Below are positions 26,979 through 63,808 of a DNA stretch of 64,000 nucleotides, piece after piece. The notes under the pieces were generated by a model. The model was not told the DNA's origin. It was given only the letters and a program-made list of their open reading frames with translations, and ran no database searches. Location: NCBI GenBank assembly GCA_002811645.1, contig PDIP01000032.1:124001-188000 (forward strand), written 5' to 3'. Position 1 is the first letter of the stretch. Each line of letters begins with the position of its first letter. A program made the position numbers and the translations under genes. Origin of the DNA: Corallochytrium limacisporum Hawaii (lineage: Eukaryota > Protista > Pluriformea).

Positions 26979-28424
26979 GGGGGGGGAGGAAGAGAACGGG
27001 ATTACGGAAGCACAAAAGCGGGGAGCGGGAAAGAGAGAAGGGGGGGGGAGTGAGATGGGGGACCTCTCCCTCCATTAAGGAGTCTTTCTGAAGAAACGTG
27101 GAGGCCTTGCTCACCACCGCGGAGAGGGGGGGGGAACGGGTATCCGTACTGCCAGGGATACCCAGCGTCGCCTGTTGACCACATTCCCTCTTCCTTCGGG
27201 GGCCCCTTCGATTTGCATTGTTTCGCATCGGCGGGGATCATTTGTGCCTGAACGAATAAAGCCAGTGTACGAGCACCCTAATCGTCGTTGAAAACAATTT
27301 TTTTCTTTTCCTGGATTGCTATCCCCTATCAGTCCGTGGTATGTTCCACTGCGACGCACTGACGACGATGTTGTTTCACTGTATTCTCTCTTGGGTTATA
27401 TCGTGGATCACCCAGCCTGATTAGCTATCTTTGTCGGCCGACTAAGAGACAAAATCTGCCGCCCTGCTTCTCGCTCTTCCTTTCGATGATCCGGGGATGG
27501 ATGCCTCCTTTGTGATTGTTCCGCCGGCCGTATCCTGCCCCCATCGCCTGGACTGGAGAAGGAACGCGAGTGACTGTGTGCGATGGCCCGTTAGGGACAC
27601 AAACATGGGTAATACCTACCTACCTTTTTTTAACCCCCAACATTGGAAACTCAAGTAGAATGTCACCAGAAAAGAATATCTTCTTTTTGACGTACTTGCG
27701 CTCTGTGCCTCCTGCAACCGCTCTGAACTGCTTCGCCGGGGGTGGGGGGAGAGCGGAGTCAGGTATATAAATCGGCTCCCCCGTTGGTACGCGAACGTCT
27801 CCAGGAACCATGCACGCACGGCGCGGGCCCGGAAGCTAGAGAGCGAGCAGAGGAAAGACGAGCAGGGGATCAGATCCCCCGGGACCTTTTGTGCTCTCCT
27901 TCTTTCAGTGTTTACGCATTTGCTAGGCAGCAGCGCGACTGCCTGCTCTCTCGCATATTTATCAGAACTCGTGGACCTTTTAGTCGGATGTCTTTTCTCT
28001 CCCTGAGTCACTCCTGCACCACTGTTGCTGCGCGCAGCCATGATGATGATAAAATCGGGAATGATATAAAGGAGAACGTTAAAAAGTACAAATAGTGGGA
28101 ACTGCTTGTCCGTTCACCACCACGGGGGGGGGGTCCACGAGAAGGGGAGGGGAAGCGCCGTAGTGACACGCTGTGCGATGAAACTTCTGCCGTGTATTCA
28201 TCAGAAGAAACAGACCATGATGCCAATCGATACAAAGTTAGAAACAGCGGTAACGCTCTCTTTTGGGCAAGAAGTTATCGCGAAGTCATTATACGTCTCA
28301 ATTGCTAGACTTTGGACGGTGCCTCAGCCGAGGGATGGGCGTGGATTTATTTTGTTGACTTTGCCTAACTAAAAGTTACAATGATATGGATATGTGGTTG
28401 TCTGACGACTAAGCATGCAATACC

Positions 28425-37462: not shown

Positions 37463-37909
37463 ACTGTTCCTTGGTCACCATTCGTCTACGAGAGCATGCT
37501 GACGTTAGAAGAGCGATGTTTCGTGTTCCAACGCTGTCCCAAAGTAGTTGTCTTGTGAGCTCAGCCGTGACGCAACTCTTGAGGGCTGAGTGGAGAAATT
37601 CCAGTGGAGAGTCTCACCAGAACAGGAGCACAGGAGGAGCAGGGAGGGACACCCCCACCCCCTCTCCCTCCCTCCCTCGAAAGAGGGGGGTGCGCTATGC
37701 AAAGTAGCTGGTTTCTCGATGGCCTGGTCTAATTTGGTGACCCGCGCTGCACATGTTCTAAGCCATTGCCTACGGTACTGTGCAGTAGGTTATGAAGACG
37801 ACCTTTTCTTCTTGGTACTTGGGCTCTGCATGAAGAAATAATTCACTGACTGGGACACAGAATCTTCATAAATACTTTCTAAATTGTAGATATTACAATT
37901 CAGAACACT

Positions 37910-38812
37910 ATGTCTAGACAAGATCAGTTCGACGGTATGCTGCTTGCAGTTGCCCAGCAGACCAGTGGCATTGATGAGCTTTTGGACGTGTTCTTTGGTT
38001 TCCTCGATCGTAAGACCGACTTCTATAGCAATCCACAGCAAGACCCAAAGGCTGCTGTGGACCGGGTATTCAAGAGGTACTGCAAGGCCAAGCAGTCGGT
38101 GCCTTCGAAGTCTACGCCGGCGAGCATCCAAGAGATCAAGGAAGAGAGGCCAGCAGAGGATGTGATGCAGACAATTGAAGCAGAGAGAAAGAAACAGGAA
38201 GAGTTGGTTGCTGCTGCGACTGCGAAAAAGACCGAGGGACCCAAGGACAGTGGGGAGACGAAGGAGGAAGATGGTCCGGAAGAGGGCAAACAGATGCCTA
38301 ATGTTGGCAACGGTGGCTTTGCCGACAATTACATTTGGTCACAGACTTTGGCTGACGTGGAAATTCGTCTACCCACTCAGATAGATGCCCGACTGAAGGG
38401 TCGTGACATTGTTGTGGACATCGGACGGCGCAAATTGAAGGTGGCTATCAAGAACGGCAAGACCCTTGTTGATGGTGAGCTGTACAACGAAGTGAAGGCA
38501 GATGAAAGCTTTTGGACACTGGAAGATGGCAAGACCATTGTAGTGCAGTTGAACAAAATTAACGCCATGGAGTGGTGGGAATCTATTGTGAAAGGTGGTC
38601 CTGCCATTGATACCAAGAAAGTGGAGCCGGAGAACAGCAACCTCAGTGACCTAGACGGAGACACTCGGCAAATGGTGGAGAAGATGATGTATGATCAGCG
38701 ACAAAAGCAGATGGGTTTGCCCACAAGTGATGAGCAGAAGAAGCAGGATATGCTCAACAAATTCATGGCGCAGCATCCAGAAATGGACTTCAGCAATGCA
38801 AAGATTCAGTAA
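37910..38812 (+). CDS. NUDC: Nuclear migration protein NudC
   Basis: FDGMLL..AQQ...FFGFL.RKTDF, a CS domain (Y.WSQTL), and PENS.LSDLDG.TR.MVEKMMYDQRQK...HPEMDFS. Confidence 0.97.
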   Translation: MSRQDQFDGMLLAVAQQTSGIDELLDVFFGFLDRKTDFYSNPQQDPKAAVDRVFKRYCKAKQSVPSKSTPASIQEIKEERPAEDVMQTIEAERKKQEELVAAATAKKTEGPKDSGETKEEDGPEEGKQMPNVGNGGFADNYIWSQTLADVEIRLPTQIDARLKGRDIVVDIGRRKLKVAIKNGKTLVDGELYNEVKADESFWTLEDGKTIVVQLNKINAMEWWESIVKGGPAIDTKKVEPENSNLSDLDGDTRQMVEKMMYDQRQKQMGLPTSDEQKKQDMLNKFMAQHPEMDFSNAKIQ

Positions 38813-39602
38813 TCAAGCTGTGTTTCTTACGAGATTTGTGCATGATTAAATCAACTCTTTCCTGTAATAAAGAAGATCCCGGGAGTTCAACAGGTTTGTC
38901 TTTCATGGCGGGCTTTGCGGTTTCGTCTCTCGCTTTAGGATCGGCCATCGCGGCTTCGATCTGCTTTTTTCGCTCTTCTCTTTGTTTCGTTTCCCTCTCT
39001 TTCCGGATCTTAATGTCACTCTTAACACGGTCATTCAACTCATCATAGTGGCATACGCTTTAATCGATGAGCCACCTGAGCCCTTCTTCAATCGCATCAT
39101 CAAGGCCCTCCGTGCCTTTTGCCTGACAAGAGACTATCTTTGGACACTTTTCATCTCCAATAAACCGGGACACAAGCGTTGCGTCTTGCTCGTTAGCAAT
39201 GAGATCTCTCTTGTTTCCAAGGAGTAGCAATGGCTTTCCCTTCACATGCTCATTCTCAAGGACTCCAGCCAGAACCTCTCGTGACCCCGCAAACTTTTGC
39301 TCATCTGTAAGATCAAACACTTAGATAACACCATGTACATCTGGTGTGTAGTTTGACCAGATATGAGGTATCCTTGTACCACCACCAACGTCGTATATTG
39401 TGACCTGTATGTCTCCCATTTGAAACACTTCCCGATTCAACCCGACCGTTGGGACAATATAGTCAACAGGTTGACCTTGAATTGCACTGACAACAGTCGA
39501 TTTTCCAGCATTATCTAGACCAAGTACCACGTATGTAAGGCCTCAAAACTGAGCGTCTGCATCCTGCTTGACTTGTAAGTTGCTTGAGCACCTGCAGCCC
39601 AT
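38790..39602 (-). pseudogene. ARL13B: ARL13B-like ciliary GTPase interrupted by three in-frame stops (TGA 39543-45, TAA 39321-23, TAA 39060-62)
   Basis: A single frame reads MGCRCS..QF*GLTYVVLGLDNAGKST..PTVG..YDVGGG..IW.NY..HGVI*VFD..GKPLLLLGNKRD..GLRWLID*SVCHYDELNDRV and then a coiled coil. DxGGG (no catalytic Gln) plus the coiled coil are ARL13 hallmarks. Confidence 0.85.
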
Positions 39603-40594
39603 TGCGTGGTCTCCCTGTACACATCGCTGGGAATGTTCGACTTGGAATTGGTTCGAATCTAGTATGGCGTTTGATGTTCATGGCTCCTCAGGGAGTTCAC
39701 ACCGCTTGAATAGGCGGAACTCATCATTTAGCGCTACTCTGTCAATCAGCCGTTGGGATTTCTGGTACTTCCTCTCACCCACATCAGCGCCTGTAGAGTT
39801 CAATGGGCAGACGAGGGTTGCCTTGACACGAATCCCTCTCAGTCCCCTCCGGGGCCCCAGGACAGTTTCGAGGTACCACCTATTTCCTGCCTTTCCAAGC
39901 CAAGGCCCATATCAGGGCAGAGGCCAAAGGTATCTATCTAATATGAAATCGAACTGATTGTGGTACCACTCTGGGCCGTGTGTCTACAAAGTACAAGCAG
40001 CGCAGTTTTCTGATCCTCTATCCATCCAGAGGTAGCCCGGCCTGTTACCGCATGAGGTGTCCATACTAAACGCCAATCGACTGGACGATGGCCCCCAGTG
40101 CGTATGCAAATCCCTGTAATTCTGTTTTGTAACAAAAGAAACTCTTGGCGTCAGCAGGAAAAAAAATTGCCCGGCGTCCCAATGCTGTCTGTGAAAGTCC
40201 GCGAAGCCGTCCAGCATAAGAGTACTCAAGGTTCTGGACTCAGTGGCATTTCTACCACAGTTCGTGTAGAAACCACTACGACGCCCTCTTTTGGAAGACG
40301 TCGGAACGCTCGAGACAGAGTGGACAAGTATCGAGCAACCCAGTCGTGCCGCCGGTAGTTAGATATGCCCTGGTGATTTTTGCACCCGGGAGAGTGCGGG
40401 GGAATGGCGCAAGACGAAAAAGGGCTAGGTAGCCAGCCACACAACCCGCGGGAGTTGCAATAGTCCAGTATAGCAGGGCGGTGACACTAAAAGGCGGTGG
40501 AGGCAGTACCTGGGATAAAGCGCACACATTCATTCTTATGGTCGGAAATTAAAACTATTTCATTGAAAACGGAAATCAGCTTGCGAAACTTTAT

Positions 40595-40987
40595 ATGGCG
40601 ATCTTATTGACCAGAGTCTACTGCACAATAGAAACTTGCCGCGAATCTAGTGCAATGACAAGCAACGGTACAGAACAGCCCAAGGACAGTGGGCAGAAGG
40701 CTGAGTCTTCAAGCTCCCGCAAGCGCCGTTCCGTAAAGAACAGAGAACAGCATAATCGTCTGGAAAAATATCGTCGGGCTCATCTGAAAGCCTGCTTCGA
40801 AGAACTTAAAGAAACGATCCCGAGCATTCAGGACAGCAAAGCATCTACTGTGGCCATCCTCCAGCATGCCACGAAGTACACAGGGGCACTGAACCAGCAT
40901 TACGAGCAAACTATAATTAGGATTGCTAAGCTACGATATATTAATGAATGGTGCAAGCAGCAAATGGCTGAAATTGAGGGTAAATAA
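40595..40987 (+). CDS. MNT/Mxd-like bHLH-ZIP transcription factor (start ATG 40595 or 40655)
   Basis: REQHNRLEKYRRAHLKACFEELKETIP closely parallels MNT (REVHNKLEKNRRAHLKECFETLK..IP), and a short zipper follows. Confidence 0.85.
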   Translation: MAILLTRVYCTIETCRESSAMTSNGTEQPKDSGQKAESSSSRKRRSVKNREQHNRLEKYRRAHLKACFEELKETIPSIQDSKASTVAILQHATKYTGALNQHYEQTIIRIAKLRYINEWCKQQMAEIEGK

Positions 40988-41011
40988 AGCAGATAATAAA
41001 TATAGGCTTGC

Positions 41012-43186
41012 TCATTCTCGTGTTCCCTTGGCTGTGCTAAGCACAATAACGCAGACGTCATGGACGGGAATATGAAACAGTTTCCGGGACGCCAAATAGC
41101 TTCGTACACCGGAGATTCTGTCCAGGTCTACGTCCTCTGTGGGTTCAGCAGAAAGGCCAGCGTCTTGAATCTCATCGAAGAGCTCATCGACCTCGTCACT
41201 TGGCATTTCCAGAATGATTCGGGCCTCATTCGCAATATGCAATCTCGCACCAATTTCGGCCCAGCCCTGCCGAATACCACGTAACATAGCATTGAAGTTC
41301 CTAATGAGTGAGGTTGACACACCGGAAGAAGTTATCTGTGCAAGCAAGAGGTTTTGAACTGCGAAATGATCCAGCTCAGGTACTAAGAAATCGAGGAGGT
41401 CAGAATGCAATCGGTGGTTGAGCATGGCGCGCGCGCTTAGCAAGTGCTGGGATGCGATTGTTATGGATTCGGCCCAGACTAAAGTAGATGGGTGGTAGGA
41501 CATAATATCATCGTCGACCTGGTCGTCAGTACCATCTGGGTCCGCACATGTACGCCAGCTCAACTTCTTGATGAATCCCATGACCGTGTCACAGAGCAAC
41601 CCCGTGCAACGCCGTTCTGCATCTTCATACACCTTTTCGATGCCCATGAGATCAACCGTATCATCGGAATTCTCTGACTCATCTTTCAGCGCAAATGAAT
41701 CCAATAAACTGTGTTGTACATTTCCGATTGACTGCCGAAGCTCAGACAGACTGTTACCAATCTGACACAGTGCCCTCAGAGTTTTGTCCACGTGTCCCTG
41801 CAGGCGACTACATGTCAGCGCAGCTGAAGACAGCTCAGTTTCCGTGGCACTCAGGGTCGGAATAAAACACTTGCGGACGAACCAACGCCTTTTCTCGGCA
41901 CTTGCAATCAATGTACACCTGTCAGTGAACGACGATGTATAGATAATGAGCCGCCTCATTTCTGGCAGCAGACCATTTTCTCCCGTGTGGTCGACTGCAA
42001 TATCCTGTATGATCAAATTCTTAACAAATTGGTCCGCTGTACCAACGAGCTGGAACGCCTTCTCATACCCAGACTGCTCGTATGTTTGAAAGAGTTCCCA
42101 GAGTTTGTCATACTGCAGCAGTCGGTTCATCAGACTGTCCTCTAAATTCACACCATTCAGATTCAAAAGGCGGCGATCAAAGAGCAGAACCTCGCCGAAT
42201 GTGTGATTCAGGAGTCCATCGTCCTTTACTATTGTATCCTGATCTACCAATATTTTCTGCGCCGCAAGATCGACAGCCCGTTTAGCAAGTAGAGGGATCA
42301 ATGAGGGAAGCCAATTCAATCCGCGTTTCCGCAAGTCGGCATCGATGGTTTCGTAGCATCCCAATGAATTCAGCAAGAAGGTGAGGTACCACTCCGGCTT
42401 ATCAACCCGATTGGTTGGCCGATCTCCGATGAAATGAAATTGGAATCTTTTCAGAATGGGTGTCAGGAAGGACGTCACGAGAAAGTCGAATCGGATGGGC
42501 TTCTCATCCCGTATTCTCAAAGTCACTGGCATGCCCGCAGAACCATTGCTGTTTCTGTCATTTTCCATCAATCCCGACGTAGTCATGATCACGGGGTTCT
42601 CCAGAAAAACCATCTCCGTGACTAGTGACACCAACGATTTCCGAACTGGCAGAGACAACTCATCTGCATCCTGAACCTTCGCAAGCCACCCTACCTGATT
42701 AAACATGGCCTGGAAGTGTCGATCCAAAAATTCTCTTATAGCTTGCTGCCAATATAATTGTTCCCTTTCAATGAAAGAATTGAGACGTGTGCATGCTGAG
42801 CCAGAAGAATGTTCCATAAGCAGTGACAATTTCCCATAGTTCTGCAGGATCTGTTCCCGCTGATTGTCCTGCAGTGGTTCCTGAGGCCGCAACGCCAAAA
42901 CTGCTGCCACGTATCTACTGTACTGGTCAATCAAAAACCATCCTCCTCTCTTTTGCAATGCATCAGCATCTGATGAGGATGAGGCGTACCGGCTGTTGCT
43001 CTCCTTCGGTAAGTGTAGCTTCGCGTCTTTGAGTAACCCCTGGAGATCTGACACCTCCTCTCGCAACGCCGAATCTAGTGACTTATGTGTCTGTTTCAGA
43101 GTATCTAGCGACGCAGCCAGGTGCAATCGGTCTGCTTCTGCATCTTCCAATGCAGATTTTAATGTTTCTCTAATATTGTGGGTCAT
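41012..43186 (-). CDS. RINT1: RINT1/Tip20 ER tethering-complex subunit
   Basis: Signature PILKRFQFHF.G.RPTNRVDKPEWYL, H.FGEVLLFD..L and an N-terminal coiled coil. First ATG is at 43186. Confidence 0.92.
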   Translation of the reverse strand: MTHNIRETLKSALEDAEADRLHLAASLDTLKQTHKSLDSALREEVSDLQGLLKDAKLHLPKESNSRYASSSSDADALQKRGGWFLIDQYSRYVAAVLALRPQEPLQDNQREQILQNYGKLSLLMEHSSGSACTRLNSFIEREQLYWQQAIREFLDRHFQAMFNQVGWLAKVQDADELSLPVRKSLVSLVTEMVFLENPVIMTTSGLMENDRNSNGSAGMPVTLRIRDEKPIRFDFLVTSFLTPILKRFQFHFIGDRPTNRVDKPEWYLTFLLNSLGCYETIDADLRKRGLNWLPSLIPLLAKRAVDLAAQKILVDQDTIVKDDGLLNHTFGEVLLFDRRLLNLNGVNLEDSLMNRLLQYDKLWELFQTYEQSGYEKAFQLVGTADQFVKNLIIQDIAVDHTGENGLLPEMRRLIIYTSSFTDRCTLIASAEKRRWFVRKCFIPTLSATETELSSAALTCSRLQGHVDKTLRALCQIGNSLSELRQSIGNVQHSLLDSFALKDESENSDDTVDLMGIEKVYEDAERRCTGLLCDTVMGFIKKLSWRTCADPDGTDDQVDDDIMSYHPSTLVWAESITIASQHLLSARAMLNHRLHSDLLDFLVPELDHFAVQNLLLAQITSSGVSTSLIRNFNAMLRGIRQGWAEIGARLHIANEARIILEMPSDEVDELFDEIQDAGLSAEPTEDVDLDRISGVRSYLASRKLFHIPVHDVCVIVLSTAKGTRE

Positions 43187-57213: not shown

Positions 57214-58156
57214 GATTATGCTAGTGTTTGATGCCCCTTCAACCGAAGATCAAGCACGTAGTATTTGTGTGCCATGTAGCAGCGTGAAGAATGCCTGCAC
57301 GGGACATCCACAGAGACATCCACTTTAGGACCATAGATCCTCAGTACCTGAGTCCGTGACATATAGTTTATGGTTAATGGAATGGTTCAACATGCGACAC
57401 TTGTGTTGGAGTATGCCCCCCGGGTCCAACCCTCAGGCCTCTTTCGCCAGTAAAGCAGGTCCGGACGCTTGCCCTTTGAGACTGCGACCGGACCCGCTCT
57501 TCTCTACTGAGTTTGACCAAGTTGCGGACACCACTCAACGACAAACAGGCGCGGATAATTATATACTCAGCCTTGAAAATTTAAAATTTATATTCAAATT
57601 ATACTGATATTGATATACTTAAGTTTTAAATATGCAGCCTGCGAGAACTATTATTCCTGCTGGAGAAGCGACAAAGTTTCCCCCACCAAAGCCCATTTCC
57701 TAGTGGAAAAGTATGAACTTCCGCCGAGGACCGGGCAAGTTTTTTCGCTCCCTTTTTTGCTTTTGCTCTGGCACACGGGAGGCCTGGAGGCCAGGTAATG
57801 GTCATCTCAAGGTCTGCAATTGACACTTCGCAGTGCTTTCGGAAATAATAGTGTTCTGCACCCTCCTTTCAACGATTTGCTTTTGAGTAGCAACACAAAA
57901 ATATGAAATCTTTGAAGTTTTTGTATGCCAGTGACCCAATTTTGGACTTGGAAAGTAATATTAAGTTTCGATCAGGTATTTCTTACTGTGACTCTGATGA
58001 AAATTACATTTCAACGCAGTAGAAAAGATCAGTGTGAACACAACAGGCGGGAGGCATTCTAACGAGCTTCTTGCTTATATTGTCTCAGAAGATGAGTTGA
58101 AGTGTCACAGTGTTCGCAAATATGTGAATGAGAAACCTAGCACGACATCTACCAAA

Positions 58157-61100
58157 ATGGTTCAAGATCCTGACCCCGGTATAGAAGCGTCAAATGACGC
58201 TGGAGAGGCCAGTGAGGAAAAGATGCAATTGCGTCAGGCGGCGATCGATGAACTTGATGGCCAGATGCAAGGGATAGTTGACAATTATGAGCTCAAAGTA
58301 ATTGAAGCATATATTTTAGAGTCTGGAGATGATATTTTGTCGTGGCCATTGGATTCCTACAAGGCCTACGTAGCCAAGAACAGGTTGGAGAATGTCATTG
58401 GTGCGCAGGTCGTTGATCCTAATACAGGAGACTTGGCCTCGGAACTGAATGTCAAGGCCATGCTGAGACAAAGGAAGACAACAGACCAAGGAAAGGAGAC
58501 GCACAGTGTGGCCAGCGGTCTATCTGGAAGTGGTCTCGATGTCCCTTCACCTTCTGGCGACAGCGAAGCGTTCGTCCCTCACAGTGAACGCGGAGGAGGT
58601 GAAGGTGACAGTTTGACCCACCGCTTGGTACCACTGACTGAGTACATTCCTATGGAAGAAAGGGCCCCGGACGCTGCCATTGAGGATGAGATGGCCGTGG
58701 ACGAAACTGCGGATCAAAAGCACAAGCAGGCACAGCAAGGGAACATGGCCATTGTTAAAGTCAGGGAACTGCTCGATTCAACCCGAGCCCTGAGTTTACA
58801 AGCCATCACCACCGCGAAGGATCTTCCTGAGTTCGAAGCAAGTGTGCTGCAGGGCGTGCGGGCCCTACAGACCAGCGGTCGCTGGACCATCAAAAGACAC
58901 CCGAAAGTTCGTGAGCTTCCTGTATCCGCTACGTACCGCGATTTGGTCATGGAGGAAGCGCTGTGGATGTCAGAAGATTTTCGCATGGAAAGAAGGTGGA
59001 AGAAAGGACTGGCGGCAACACTGAGTCACCAGTGTGCGGAAATTGTGCGTGCAAAGAAGGAAATCGCGGCCGAACCAACACAGAAGATTCAACCAGAGAC
59101 AATCATTCCCCTCAAAATTGCCCGTATGGTGGAAAATTTCTGGAAGAATTTCGACCTGGCACCGGCCACAAGTATTGCGATGGACATCGACGATACAGAC
59201 GGAGATGAGGATGATGACAACATTCCAGTGTTTGAATTCACCAAGCACAGTGCCGAGATGTCCATGATTAATCTGGAAAGGTCACAGGAACTGATCCCAA
59301 TTGCTATGGAATCAGCCTCATCTGTCGTCACCAAAGACTCCATAATGCCTGCCAGTGAGAAAGGCAATAAGTCTGTCGTGCCTGTATACAAGGACTTGGC
59401 CACTGTGGTAAATGCCATGTTTGGCATCTTCTCATGCGGAGCAAACATCTTGCTGCGGAATGTCCCCTTTGAATGGCAGCGGCACCAGGCTATTATTCAC
59501 TATATTCAGTCTCTGGAGGAGAAAAATGGTGTGAGGGGACCTCATCTGTTTATCAGCGACCGCAACAGTGTCAACCAGTTGATCCAAAAATCCTCCGATG
59601 ACGCCGACAGTGGACTATTCATTCGCAAGGGAGCGAGTGTGAAGCACAAAGTACCGTTACAGTGCATTACTTTTGAGGAGTTGGCTCGTAAAGGCCCAGA
59701 GCTGGCCAAGACTGAGTGGGATCACATTTTTTTGGAGTCAGAGGACGAAGGACAATTCTTGGCACAGATGTTGGAGGACTGCCCGGATCTGCCCAATATT
59801 CCGAGCAAAAGGCGCTGTGTACTGTTGCGTGATAACGATGCCATGAAGAAAGATGGTCAGTTGAGCGTAGATAAGCGTGTGAAGATCCTGCAGAGTCTGT
59901 ACCTACTGCTGGCCTGTGAACCTGGCGACAAGGAGGTAAAGATTGCAGACGAAGTGAATGAAGGCATGGAGAAGACCGTCCGTCAGCAACTCCAAGCCAT
60001 TTCCTTCAATGCAGCAAGAGCCACGAAAAACCTAGGAGCTGAAATAGAGACAAGCGCCCCGGAAGAATGCGAAGTCTCTGTTGAGTTTGTTACTAACGAG
60101 CCGACGAACTGGCAGAAAGAACAGCTGCAGCTTACTAGCAAATTCTTACAGGCACGCACAGAGAAGCGTGAGATTGATCAGCGTGATTTGCTGTCATCCA
60201 TTCTCTACGCCCAAAAGGTTCTATGGTCTCCCGACGCTTCTTATCTGTCAATGCACGGGCGCCAAGAAGAAGGAATGAAACCAACCAGGAGCACGGATGC
60301 GGCATTTGCATCCCGGTGCCAGTCACTGTACGGGGAAGGACTTCAGCGTTCTGGCGCTGCCAAGACACAGAAGAAGGACTTCGATGAGGTGCAAACCGAG
60401 AGTCCAAAGCTGAAATGGCTCATGGACCATCTGTATTCTTGTATTGGCGACCGCACTGCGACCATTGTGCTCAGCAGTAATGGCACTCTACTTGAACATC
60501 TGGGAATGCTGCTGAAGGCCATTGAATTGCCACACATTGTGCTGGTTGGAAATGGCACTAAGGAAGTGCAGAAAGCAAGGATCGAGAGTTTCAACAAAGC
60601 TCAAGGCACCAAGATTCTCCTCATGCACACTGACTGCGGACCCATTGAGGAGATGACCAACATCGCCAAGGATATTGTCTGTCTCGGAATGCCAGTGGTT
60701 GACTTCGTGGCGCAACAGGCGATGGAAGCGCTATCAAACTTCTATGACTCTGCGTCGGGCGCCGTCACGGTACACCACGTGCTGTCCGAGGCCACCTTCG
60801 AAGAAGTGTACCAAAGCAAGGTGGACATCAAAGATTTGGAGTCAGGTGGACTTGCCAAAGCAGTGTTTGGCCCATACGAAGCCATCTCCCTGCTAGATCA
60901 CGATCTTCTGGCCAGCATGTTTGACAATGAGGACCAAGTGGAAGAGATTGGCACATTAATTCCGCCGTCCTCTGTGATTGCCTCCAGTCTCTCCCGTACG
61001 TACTTCCAGCTTGTAGACGATGTTACACAGCGGACACGCTACCGCCGAGAGGTTAACTTAGGACGCGAGAAGCCTTCTACTGGTGTGGACAAGCTTCCGG

Positions 61101-62911
61101 ACGGAGGTGATGGGGGCACCACCCACCGTCGCCACGTCCGGGACCTAGCACTGCAGAGTATCAAAACCTCTGGATCATCGGGCATGTTCTTTGCAGGAGC
61201 AGCTGACAAGGATGGCCACTTGGTGCCTGTCTGTGGCGGTGACTATCGTGATACTGGAGGTGATCTGCACCTATTTGCTTCACTCGGAGACGAATTGCTT
61301 AGCGCGGATGATTTTATCAATGACCCCTTCTTTGATGCCAACGATTTCTCAGCGTTAACCTTGGGCACTGCGAGTGGAAGTACTAGCGCCGCAGCTGCAT
61401 CTGGAGTGCTCAAAAGCAAGGGCGCCAATATTCCAACTTGGGCGCCCCCTACTAAATACGACATTGTCACACAAGATGGTAGTCTGCGCAATGGACTCTA
61501 CAACGAGAATTTAGTGCTCGGTCTGCAGCACACTGCCAAATTACCCAGACCTCCCAGACTGGGACGGAAGAAGAAAGAAGAAGCGGCAGCGGCAGCGGCA
61601 GCTGCGGCAGCTTCGGTTGCAGTCGAGAGTTCGATGCAGCGCACCGTCGGCGACGTGATTGAGGACTTCGATCTCATTGATTTTGGCAAGATGCTGATGC
61701 TCCCTGCGTCCTGCAACCTCGAGAAGAGCATGTCTGCCCAGAAACGGGCGCAACAGGCCAAGAAGATGCAGGATACAAAGTCTCTGCGCCTTGCCAGTCT
61801 CACGGACTGGAACGTGGAGGAAGATTACCTACTGCTGCGCAGTGTTGGCTTTGTGGCGAAGGCATTCCCGAGTCGGTCGGGTGCGTTGAACTGGGAACTG
61901 ATCGCAGAGGCGGTAAATTCGAAAACCAATTTTTATGGTCATCCACGAAGCGCTAAACAGTGTCGTGACCGCTACGAGAAGGTCATCGTACCCACCGAAC
62001 AGGGCAAGTACTACCCACTTATTCCCAGCCTACCCCAGGGAGGCAATAAGAAGAAGGACAAAGACAAGGACAAGAAGAATAAGAAGAAGGAAGCGCAGTT
62101 AAAGAAGAGGCCACGGCCTTCCACCCTCGTACAAATTGACACTGACGAAGGTAAAACTTTCCTTGACTACAAGAACCGAGTTAGCGAGGCAGTCAGAAGG
62201 GCCAGCCAGAAGCGCAAGAAGCGCAAAGGCACCCACGATGGTATCGGAGAGGTTCCCCATGACTCGCATACCACAGCTCTTCGCAACTACCGGCCAAGCG
62301 TCGGCCCTGCGGCCATGGCCCGGAATCTTCCGGCGAACGCAGGGGCCGCGAACGTCACCAGCGGGGCAGCGCCAGGCGCTCAGGGCCAGACACAGGCTGC
62401 CGCAGCAGCAATGGCCGGTAGTGCGGCTCAAAAACTGCGCCAGAGCACGTCAATGCTCAGTGGTGTTGCTGCAGGACACCCGCCCGGTCGCGCGATGCCA
62501 AACCCCGCAGCAGCTGCAGCAGCCGTGCGGGCGAGTCCCGCGGGACTCGGTGGCCCATCTGGCCTCGGTGCTCCGGACCTCAACGCCGGCGGTGCACACG
62601 GCGGTCCTGGGGCTGCTGCTGCTGCGGCGGCCGTCGGTGGTGCCGCTGGTGCAGGTGATTTGAAGCTGCCTTTCTCACAGGAACAGATGGCCAGCCTCAC
62701 TCAGCAACAGAAAATGCAATTGCTGAACCGTTTGCGTCTGAAACAGCACCAGCAGCAGCAGCAGCAGAAGCAGCAGCTCCTACAAAAGCAGCAGAGTCAG
62801 CTCACGGCGGCACAGCAGCAGGAACGACAGCGGCAGTTGCTTGCTCTTCAAAAAGAGCGCCAGCAGGCGCAGGCACAGGCGCAAGCTCAGGCGCAAGCAC
62901 AGGCGCAGGCG

Positions 62912-62978
<67 letters not shown>

Positions 62979-63808
62979 AGGCACAGGCGCAGGCACAGGC
63001 GCAGGCACAGGCACAGGCACAAGCTGCTGCTGCCCAACAGCAGCAGGCTGCAGCTGCCGGGGCTGCTGGGGGTCTGCTGGGTGCCAGTGCGGGCGATTTT
63101 GGTCTGCTCTTCGGTGCGGGCGCGGGTGCCGCGGGCAGCAGTGCCAAGGCCGCTGCTGCCGCTGCAGCTGGCCAGCAGCCCTACATGGCAGGGTCGCTGC
63201 TTCGGGGCTCTCCCGGAGCAGCTGCAGGAGGCGGCGCCACATCTGCTGATGCTGCGGCCCTGCAACAGCGCTTGCAGCAGCAGCAGGCCGCGCAGGCACA
63301 GCAGAGGGCAGCAGCAGCGGCGGCGGGCGCTGGCGCAGCTGGACAGCTACCCCCCGCGGAAGTGAGGGCTCGCCAAAAGCTGCGCACTTTGGCGCAATGG
63401 TTTGTGTCAAAGGTGCCGAACGCCAAGCCGCACGTAGCGTCGGTCATTCAACGCCAGGACATGACCACAGAGCAAAAGATTGTACAGGTTCAGAAGCTGG
63501 TTGTCCGTGCTCAAACAATGATCCGTCAGCGGCAGCAACAGGCACAGGCAGCCCAGAGACACCAACAACAACAGGCAGCGGCTGCAGCTGCGGCCGGTCC
63601 CGGCGCCGGCGCCGGTCCTGGCGGTGCCGGTGGTTTCAATCTTGGCGGCCTCGACTTCGGTATTGGTGCAAGTACTGCAGGAGCCGTCAATCCCGGCTCG
63701 GGCGCCGGCGGAGACGGCAGCAACGGTCAGGGCGGCGGTGCCACGGGCATTCCCAGCTTTGATGCGCTGCTGAGTCCGAAAGGCGGGGCCGGTGACCAAG
63801 CAAAATAA
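58157..63808 (+). CDS. EP400: p400/Domino-like NuA4/TIP60 scaffold: HSA + degenerate SNF2 ATPase + SANT + Q/A-rich tail
   Basis: HSA: EEALWMSEDFRMERRWKK. Also PTWAPPT. SANT: W.VEEDY.LL...NWELIAE.VN...RSAKQCRDRYE.VI.P.EQGK. SNF2 remnants lie between HSA and SANT. First ATG is at 58157. Confidence 0.85.
62864..63026 (+). repeat. Coding hexamer repeat (CAGGCR)n encoding poly(Gln-Ala)
   Basis: Roughly 27 QA units with an uninterrupted CAGGCA core. Confidence 0.95.

What the first reader, a model, noticed from the sequence alone, without database searches (positions are those of the whole stretch)
38790..39602. Ciliary ARL13B gene with three in-frame stops and no frameshift: recent cilium loss or stop recoding
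Seen: the ORF-track pieces 39321-39530, 39060-39320 and 38790-39038, plus an unlisted MGCRCS N-terminus (ATG 39602), form one 271-codon frame broken only by TGA, TAA and TAA. Known: ARL13B is largely restricted to ciliated eukaryotes and acts as the ARL3 GEF. Against human ARL13B (from memory), stop 1 falls on Arg20 (CGA>TGA would be one CpG transition) and stop 2 falls on the aromatic residue of GVIFVVD (TAY>TAA). The Joubert-syndrome positions R79 and Y86 read P and T here. Inference: this is most likely a young unitary pseudogene, a fossil of very recent flagellum loss. The more exciting alternative is stage-specific restoration by readthrough or RNA editing (A-to-I would turn all three stops into Trp), analogous to sexual-stage premature-stop correction in filamentous ascomycetes.
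Basis: partly seen in the sequence, partly recalled or inferred. Interest (0 to 1): 0.85.

Follow-up and report, generated by a model that had tools for sequence, protein, structure and literature searches.

The report
Dead cilium gene marks flagellum loss
In Corallochytrium, a single-celled relative of animals thought to hide a flagellated stage, this cilium gene (ARL13B) and most other cilium genes checked are broken or gone, so that stage very probably no longer exists, while one transport module (IFT-A) stays intact and probably has another job.

Summary
In detail: window 39602-38790 (minus strand) is an ARL13 gene of 270 codons with three in-frame stops. The genome is Corallochytrium limacisporum.

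The gene is a unitary pseudogene, not recoded. The stops are in the DNA contig and unedited in a matching RNA-type contig. A second strain shares stops 1 and 2, has GAA at stop 3, and carries its own 2-nt frameshift. Trp, the A-to-I product, is almost never found at these sites in 94 homologues.

Genome-wide, ARL3, ARL6, B9D1, B9D2, IFT46, IFT54, IFT57, a kinesin-2, meckelin and DNAH2 are broken by stops, frameshifts or large deletions. No axonemal or IFT dynein motor domain was found. This contradicts the published 'cryptic flagellate stage'.

Unexpectedly, all five large IFT-A subunits and Tubby keep long open frames (about 7,400 IFT-A codons, no stop), as do centriole genes. Centrioles are known from TEM. 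The IFT-A retention suggests a cilium-independent role, perhaps as a vesicle coat.

Other first-stage readers of this scan noted ciliary decay, and an IFT-A-only idea, on other contigs of this genome. I found no paper reporting it, but could not read the 2015 source paper.

The parts
38790..39602 (-). ARL13 (ARL13B-type) unitary pseudogene, 270 codons plus terminal TGA, no intron
39546..39602 (-). N-terminal 19 codons with a Cys pair (MGCRC), the position of the ARL13 palmitoylation site; the only part translatable before stop 1
   Evidence: role from established knowledge
39543..39545 (-). Stop 1, TGA at codon 20 (R or K in most homologues; CGA>TGA is one transition, inferred); shared by both strains
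39048..39542 (-). Arf-type GTPase domain with G1 GLDNAGKS, G3 DVGGG (Gly in place of the catalytic Gln, as in ARL13) and G4 NKRD
39363..39368 (-). Codons 79-80: Pro-His in this genome, Arg-Asp in the second strain; Arg79 is found in 93 of 94 homologues, so Pro79 is a recent loss
39321..39323 (-). Stop 2, TAA at codon 94 (F or Y in homologues; TAY>TAA inferred); shared by both strains
39060..39062 (-). Stop 3, TAA at codon 181; GAA (Glu) in the second strain, so private to this strain
38937..39047 (-). Charged coiled-coil segment after the G domain, with the ARL13 pattern L..RV..D
38965..38966 (.). 2-nt deletion in a 6-base homopolymer in the second strain (frameshift after codon about 213); absent in this assembly
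37910..38812 (+). Intact NudC gene, convergent; its last 23 bases overlap the 3' end of the ARL13 frame; used as a local control for strain divergence
37885..39653 (.). RNA-type contig in two 2015 runs spanning NudC and the ARL13 pseudogene, ending about 50 nt upstream of the ARL13 ATG, with no depth in the flanking intergenic gaps
   Evidence: RNA status is the tool's guess and strand is unknown

Best explanation
The locus is the only ARL13 gene of Corallochytrium limacisporum and is a dead, neutrally decaying unitary pseudogene left by loss of the flagellum. Shown: the three stops are genomic. Two are shared by both cultured strains, and each strain has gained one further lesion of its own (a stop here, a frameshift there). 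Its partners and most other ciliary modules tested are broken or undetectable, while centriole genes and the IFT-A/Tubby module are open. Inferred: translation ends at codon 20, so no GEF is made, and its substrate ARL3 is dead too. Loss predates the split of the strains and is therefore not a culture artefact. The gene may have escaped the large deletions seen elsewhere because it abuts the 3' end of NudC. The locus is probably still transcribed, which could help explain why transcriptome surveys scored flagellar genes as present.
For: Stops present in DNA contig X1 and unedited in RNA-type contig X3 (0 differences over 37885-39651); X4 differs by 10 substitutions and a 2-nt deletion within ARL13. 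Seven of these are non-synonymous (one at stop 3) and 3 synonymous, over 625 and 176 sites; this ratio is not different from neutral (P=0.46). Non-synonymous density is 8 times that of NudC (P=0.03), and all substitutions 5.6 times (P=0.017). Seven of 39 highly conserved columns are changed, against a median of 2 in homologues. No second ARL13 among 45 Arf-family matches. ARL3-like and ARL6-like genes have internal deletions and frameshifts. B9D1-like: TAG plus deletion; B9D2-like: 2 TAG, frameshift, 3' loss; IFT46: N-terminal two thirds missing plus frameshift. IFT57 and IFT54 frameshifted. Kinesin-2-like remnant deleted and frameshifted. DNAH2 reduced to about 110 recognisable residues. Meckelin reduced to 43 residues. 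Only one dynein motor domain found, in the 4,907-aa cytoplasmic-type chain. [quoted passage not shown]
Against: Contigs show only majority sequence, come from standard cultures and drop rare variants, so rare or stage-specific editing is not excluded directly. RNA status of X3 and X4 is a guess by the tool. Strain substitution counts are small. The X4 deletion lies in a homopolymer. Empty HMM searches (BBS5, BBS9, IFT38, IFT43, IFT52, IFT81) had no eukaryotic positive control. The lesions in the other ciliary genes were read from this one assembly only. IFT-A, Tubby, delta and epsilon tubulin and SAS-6 are intact, which a rudimentary cilium-like structure could also use.
Confidence: 0.93

Rival explanations
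1. Stage-specific restoration by A-to-I editing or stop readthrough, as in premature-stop correction in ascomycete sexual stages, makes functional ARL13 in a cryptic flagellated stage.
For: This assembly has only stops and no frameshift in ARL13. The two TAG stops of the B9D2-like gene sit at positions I recall as Trp (residue identity from memory). A cryptic flagellate stage has been proposed (PMC7147346).
Against: No RNA-DNA difference at the stops. Trp in 0, 1 and 0 of 94 homologues at the three sites. Stop 3 is GAA in the sister strain, which also has a frameshift. Editing cannot mend the deletions and frameshifts in ARL3, ARL6, IFT46, IFT54, IFT57, B9D2, kinesin-2 and DNAH2. Arg79 is lost in this strain.
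Confidence: 0.02
2. The stops are assembly or sequencing errors.
For: X1 may be the source of the assembly, so it is not independent.
Against: Two 2015 runs from other samples and studies carry stops 1 and 2, and one carries all three. Neighbouring housekeeping genes and 11 kinesins have no stops.
Confidence: 0.01
3. ARL13 alone was lost, as in some ciliated taxa, and a reduced non-motile cilium-like structure persists, built on the centriole with IFT-A but without IFT-B, transition zone or IFT motors.
For: IFT121, IFT122, IFT139, IFT140, IFT144, Tubby, delta and epsilon tubulin and SAS-6 are open. Centrioles are seen by TEM (PMC11153136). [quoted passage not shown]
Against: All IFT-B subunits tested are broken or undetected, and no dynein-2 heavy chain or intact kinesin-2 was found. 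From established knowledge, IFT-B and kinesin-2 are what compartmental ciliogenesis needs most. The TEM passages I read describe centriolar MTOCs and mention no axoneme.
Confidence: 0.04
4. The protein is dead, but the DNA is kept for a second role as the 3' end or antisense partner of NudC. This is compatible with the best explanation.
For: The frames overlap by 23 nt and one RNA-type contig spans both genes in both strains. No large deletion is visible within the G domain or coiled coil, unlike many other ciliary relics.
Against: Substitution density between strains is 5.6 times that of NudC, with an indel, so sequence-level constraint is weak or absent. Short genes are also simply smaller targets for deletion.
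Confidence: 0.15

Closest known systems
ARL13/ARL13B (Arf-like ciliary GTPase, GEF for ARL3; PDB 4m9q, 5di3)
   Same: G domain with Gly at the catalytic Gln position, N-terminal Cys pair, following coiled coil; about 35% median identity to ARL13-like homologues over the G-domain region, and groups with them at 100/98 support.
   Different: Three nonsense codons, Arg79 lost in this strain, short C-terminal tail (270 codons against about 330-550 in most full-length hits); cannot make a protein.
Ciliary pseudogenes in taxa with recent cilium loss, e.g. the apparent ARL3 pseudogene of Reticulomyxa filosa (bioRxiv 10.1101/2021.10.14.464442)
   Same: A cilium-restricted Arf-like gene decaying in an organism scored as ambiguous for cilia.
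   Different: Here ARL13, ARL3 and ARL6 are all dead, two strains allow the decay to be ordered, and the organism is a transfectable close relative of animals.
Cryptic flagellate stage proposed for C. limacisporum (Torruella et al. 2015, as cited in PMC7147346 and PMC12731214)
   Same: Same organism and the same class of genes; flagellar genes are recognisable and at least this one appears transcribed.
   Different: Most of the genes tested are pseudogenes or remnants, which points to loss rather than a hidden stage. The 2015 paper itself was not available, so I cannot say which genes it scored.
IFT-A as a COPI-like vesicle coat (WDR35/IFT121; PMC8754431) and non-ciliary IFT-A roles (PMC6294004)
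   Same: The subunits proposed to form the coat (IFT121, IFT139 and the core) and the Tubby adaptor are what stays intact in this genome.
   Different: In those systems IFT-A works in organisms that have cilia, IFT-B and kinesin-2. Here it persists without them and is strongly diverged (IFT122 35-37% identical to orthologues that are 48-72% identical to each other).
A-to-I premature-stop correction in filamentous ascomycetes (own knowledge)
   Same: In-frame stops in an otherwise open conserved gene.
   Different: Those stops sit at conserved Trp codons and are edited in mRNA; here the sites are Arg/Lys, Phe/Tyr and a variable residue, and are unedited.

Membership tests
ARL13 subfamily (by descent) | Arf-family G domain whose best matches are ARL13 | tested here: met
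   Pfam Arf 6e-19; top PDB hits are ARL13B
ARL13 subfamily (by descent) | Gly in place of the catalytic Gln in the G3 motif | tested here: met
   DVGGG; Gly in 84 of 94 homologues
ARL13 subfamily (by descent) | Coiled-coil extension after the G domain and N-terminal Cys for palmitoylation | tested here: met
   L189, R192, V193 and D196 match the consensus; MGCRC start
ARL13 subfamily (by descent) | Groups with ARL13 apart from other Arf paralogues in a tree | tested here: met
   100/98 branch separating it and 22 hits from the genome's own ARF1, ARL1, ARL2, ARL5, ARL8, ARFRP1 and SAR1. Caveats: the hits were chosen by similarity to the query and are mostly unnamed, and no ARL3 or ARL6 rows were included.
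Functional ARL13B GEF | Open reading frame and intact switch II Arg79 | tested here: not met
   three stops; Pro79 in this strain
Functional ARL13B GEF | GEF activity on ARL3 and ciliary location | not testable with these tools
   the ARL3-like gene is itself broken
Unitary pseudogene | Disabling lesions fixed in the genome | tested here: met
   stops 1 and 2 in both strains; one private lesion each
Unitary pseudogene | No functional copy elsewhere in the genome | tested here: met
   no other ARL13 among the Arf-family matches; draft assembly, 83% BUSCO per PMC5560861
Unitary pseudogene | Neutral evolution (dN/dS near 1) | tested here: inconclusive
   7 non-synonymous and 3 synonymous changes, ratio about 0.65, not different from 1, but few changes
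RNA-edited or readthrough gene | RNA differs from DNA at the stop codons | tested here: not met
   0 differences in X3; no A>G-type change at the stops in X4; contigs only, standard cultures
RNA-edited or readthrough gene | Edited codon restores the conserved residue (Trp) | tested here: not met
   Trp in 0, 1 and 0 of 94 homologues

The most novel reading that the evidence does not exclude
C. limacisporum has dismantled its flagellum module by module but keeps, under selection, a diverged IFT-A complex (IFT121, 122, 139, 140, 144) with a Tubby adaptor, without IFT-B, BBSome, transition zone or IFT motors. IFT-A would then work as a stand-alone, cilium-independent membrane coat or cargo adaptor in a transfectable unicellular relative of animals. 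The open frames are shown; selection is inferred from them; the coat function is a hypothesis.
Probability: 0.55. Interest if true: 0.82.

Novelty: new member of a known kind. Interest (0 to 1): 0.6.

Why it matters
The pseudogene alone is ordinary. Its context matters for three reasons. First, a cryptic flagellate stage in Corallochytrium is repeated in the literature on animal origins, and this evidence says the genes behind that claim are largely relics; presence calls from similarity hits to transcripts can mistake transcribed pseudogenes for a working organelle. Second, a flagellum caught mid-loss sorts ciliary genes into those that decay (cilium-only) and those that stay open (second jobs), a genome-wide screen for non-ciliary functions of ciliopathy genes. 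Third, retention of IFT-A and Tubby without IFT-B or motors makes the question of whether IFT-A acts as a vesicle coat testable in a species with stable transfection.

Tried and rejected
Alternative genetic code: rejected, because neighbouring genes are long and open and end in ordinary stops. Tiny in-frame introns hiding the stops: rejected, because the alignment to homologues is one residue per codon across stops 2 and 3 and no joint appears in the RNA-type contigs. An intron explaining the IFT57 break: unlikely, since the only GT..AG there spans about 17-20 nt, while introns in the ARF6-like gene are about 80 nt by eye. Homologue search with the 86-aa middle piece gave nothing; that tool only sees proteins of similar length, so this blank means nothing. 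Contig look-ups for three neighbouring proteins gave nothing. The marine metagenome run X5 holds two short near-identical pieces of neighbouring sequence but none across the ARL13 stops. The bacterial promoter scan is not applicable. Torruella 2015 was not held, nor was the id I tried for a paper on IFT module evolution. ARL3, ARL6, B9D1, B9D2 and kinesin-2 were named from Pfam family plus motif inspection, not from trees.

Full report
Observation. The minus strand from 39602 to 38790 is one frame of 270 codons plus a terminal TGA, interrupted by TGA at codon 20 (39545-39543), TAA at codon 94 (39323-39321) and TAA at codon 181 (39062-39060). The first two pieces match Pfam Arf, and the best solved-structure matches of the first piece are ARL13B (4m9q, 5di3; E 2e-13). 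I read the gene through with X at each stop and aligned it with 94 homologues from the representative search. It has the ARL13 marks: Gly in place of the catalytic Gln, an N-terminal Cys pair and the coiled coil after the G domain. In a tree it falls with those homologues, apart from the genome's other Arf proteins, at 100/98 support. The homologues were picked by similarity and are mostly unnamed, so the tree is a consistency check only.

Organism. The assembly is 24.1 Mb in 286 contigs and intron-poor. Two of its proteins are identical to EukProt entries named Clim_evm, and 24.1 Mb is the published size for Corallochytrium limacisporum (PMC5560861). Two cultured strains exist, India (described 1987) and Hawaii (bioRxiv 10.1101/2020.11.12.379420). 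A cryptic flagellate stage has been proposed for this species from its gene content (PMC7147346; PMC12731214).

Are the stops real, and are they edited? Contigs of four runs were laid on 37500-41300. DNA run X1, possibly the source of the assembly, is identical. X3 and X4 are 2015 runs from other samples and studies, guessed by the tool to be RNA; their coverage follows gene boundaries and is absent in intergenic gaps, as expected of RNA. X3 covers 37885-39651 with no difference, so all three stops are present unedited at consensus level. X4, which I take to be the other strain, shares stops 1 and 2, reads GAA at stop 3, keeps Arg79, and has a 2-nt deletion at about 38965 that shifts the frame in the coiled coil. 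Each strain has thus gained a lesion of its own on top of two shared ones, so the loss predates their split and is not a culture artefact (inference). Within ARL13 the strains differ at 10 of 813 bases against 2 of 903 in NudC (P=0.017). Non-synonymous changes are 7 of 625 sites against 1 of 717 (P=0.03). The ratio of non-synonymous to synonymous rates in ARL13 is about 0.65, not distinguishable from 1. These counts are small. A-to-I editing would give Trp, which is found in 0, 1 and 0 of 94 homologues at these sites. Three stops imply very roughly 8% neutral change since death (range 2-24%): young, but several times the strain divergence.

The rest of the ciliary kit. No second ARL13 was found. 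The ARL3-like and ARL6-like genes have internal deletions and frameshifts. B9D1-like has a TAG and a deletion; B9D2-like has two TAG, a frameshift and a lost 3' end; IFT46 lacks its first two thirds and is frameshifted. IFT57 and IFT54 are frameshifted. A kinesin-2-like gene has lost most of its motor domain, and none of the intact kinesins shows a kinesin-2 neck by inspection. Dynein motor-domain searches find only one heavy chain, a 4,907-aa cytoplasmic type; a search with an N-terminal domain adds a remnant of about 110 residues of axonemal DNAH2 between two other genes. Meckelin is a 43-residue scrap. BBS5, BBS9, IFT38, IFT43, IFT52 and IFT81 gave no hit, and IFT80 and IFT172 did not appear in the shared TPR searches; blanks are weak evidence alone. 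Deletions and frameshifts cannot be mended by editing, so recoding is excluded as a general explanation. Names for ARL3, ARL6, B9D1, B9D2 and kinesin-2 rest on Pfam family plus motif inspection, and these lesions were read in this assembly only.

What stays intact. Alpha, beta, gamma, delta and epsilon tubulin and SAS-6 are open, which fits the centriolar spindle poles seen by TEM (PMC11153136). Less expected, all five large IFT-A subunits have long stop-free frames: IFT121 1,463 aa, IFT122 1,189 aa, IFT140 1,240 aa, IFT144 1,858 aa and IFT139 1,638 aa, plus a Tubby protein of 504 aa. At even one lesion per 300 codons, the first four would all stay open with probability about 5e-9. IFT122 is full length (1,187 aa) but only 35-37% identical to orthologues that are 48-72% identical to one another. 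IFT140 and IFT144 are more diverged still, and IFT140 matches only the first part of the C-terminal TPR profile. So IFT-A appears kept by selection, under long-altered constraint (inference). IFT-A has been proposed to act as a COPI-like vesicle coat (PMC8754431), which is the mechanism I think most likely here; it is untested.

Mechanism. Shown: genomic stops, shared and private lesions, unedited consensus RNA-type contigs, module-wise decay. Inferred: the flagellum became dispensable, selection on cilium-only genes lapsed, long genes were cut down by deletions and short ones collected point lesions. ARL13 translation ends at codon 20. The contig ending about 50 nt upstream of its ATG in both strains suggests its promoter still fires, though strand cannot be read from contigs and a long NudC 3' end is also possible. 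Transcribed relics of this kind could account for earlier presence calls.

Comparison and novelty. A ciliary Arf-like pseudogene in a lineage that recently lost cilia has a precedent (ARL3 in Reticulomyxa; bioRxiv 10.1101/2021.10.14.464442), so the gene is a new member of a known kind. I found no paper reporting ciliary pseudogenes or IFT-A retention in Corallochytrium, but the library lacks most subscription papers, including the 2015 source. First-stage readers of this scan noted similar decay and an IFT-A-only idea on other contigs of the same genome; these are unchecked notes, and I count only what I tested.

Verdict. Pseudogene from flagellum loss, confidence 0.93; recoding about 0.02. 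Interest 0.6: the exciting recoding reading is refuted, but the result contradicts a repeated claim about a key relative of animals and exposes a testable IFT-A-only system (probability about 0.55, interest 0.82 if true).

Noticed in passing
G000 C173, C88, C25, C177, C49, C246 (L070, L074, L077, L080): All five large IFT-A subunits and a Tubby protein have long open frames while IFT-B, transition-zone genes and IFT motors are broken or undetected; IFT122 is on a long branch.
   Followed up: partly
L071:8764-9252 (minus), G000 C261: A remnant of about 110 residues of axonemal dynein DNAH2 is squeezed between a RAD51/DMC1-like gene and a convergent 814-aa gene; nearly all of a 13-kb gene has gone.
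   Followed up: partly
L071:9393-10000 and upstream (minus): A RAD51/DMC1-family recombinase gene with at least one intron looks intact; if it is DMC1 it would hint at meiosis in Corallochytrium. Not tested.
   Followed up: no
L033 (G000 C179, about 28100-28400) and L034 (G000 C243, about 128000-128450): ARL3-like and ARL6/BBS3-like pseudogenes with clean internal deletions that remove the P-loop region.
   Followed up: partly
window 38790-38812: The NudC stop and the ARL13 3' end overlap by 23 nt on opposite strands, and one RNA-type contig spans both genes in both strains.
   Followed up: partly
window 38091-38323 and 40462-40637: A 2025 marine metagenome (run X5) holds short pieces 99-100% identical to this genome, so wild Corallochytrium DNA may be present there at low depth.
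   Followed up: no
G000 C272:24781-24876: A second, 32-residue Tubby-domain match in a 57-aa frame; either an exon of an intron-containing gene or a decayed second TULP.
   Followed up: no
window 58034-63808 (+): A 1,924-aa EP400/EAF1-like protein with HSA- and Myb-like regions and a long Gln-Ala repeat; named by eye only.
   Followed up: no
L072:4067-5749 (minus): A 560-aa ORF that appears to fuse a DinB-like N-terminal domain to a eukaryotic-type pantothenate kinase; by eye only.
   Followed up: no
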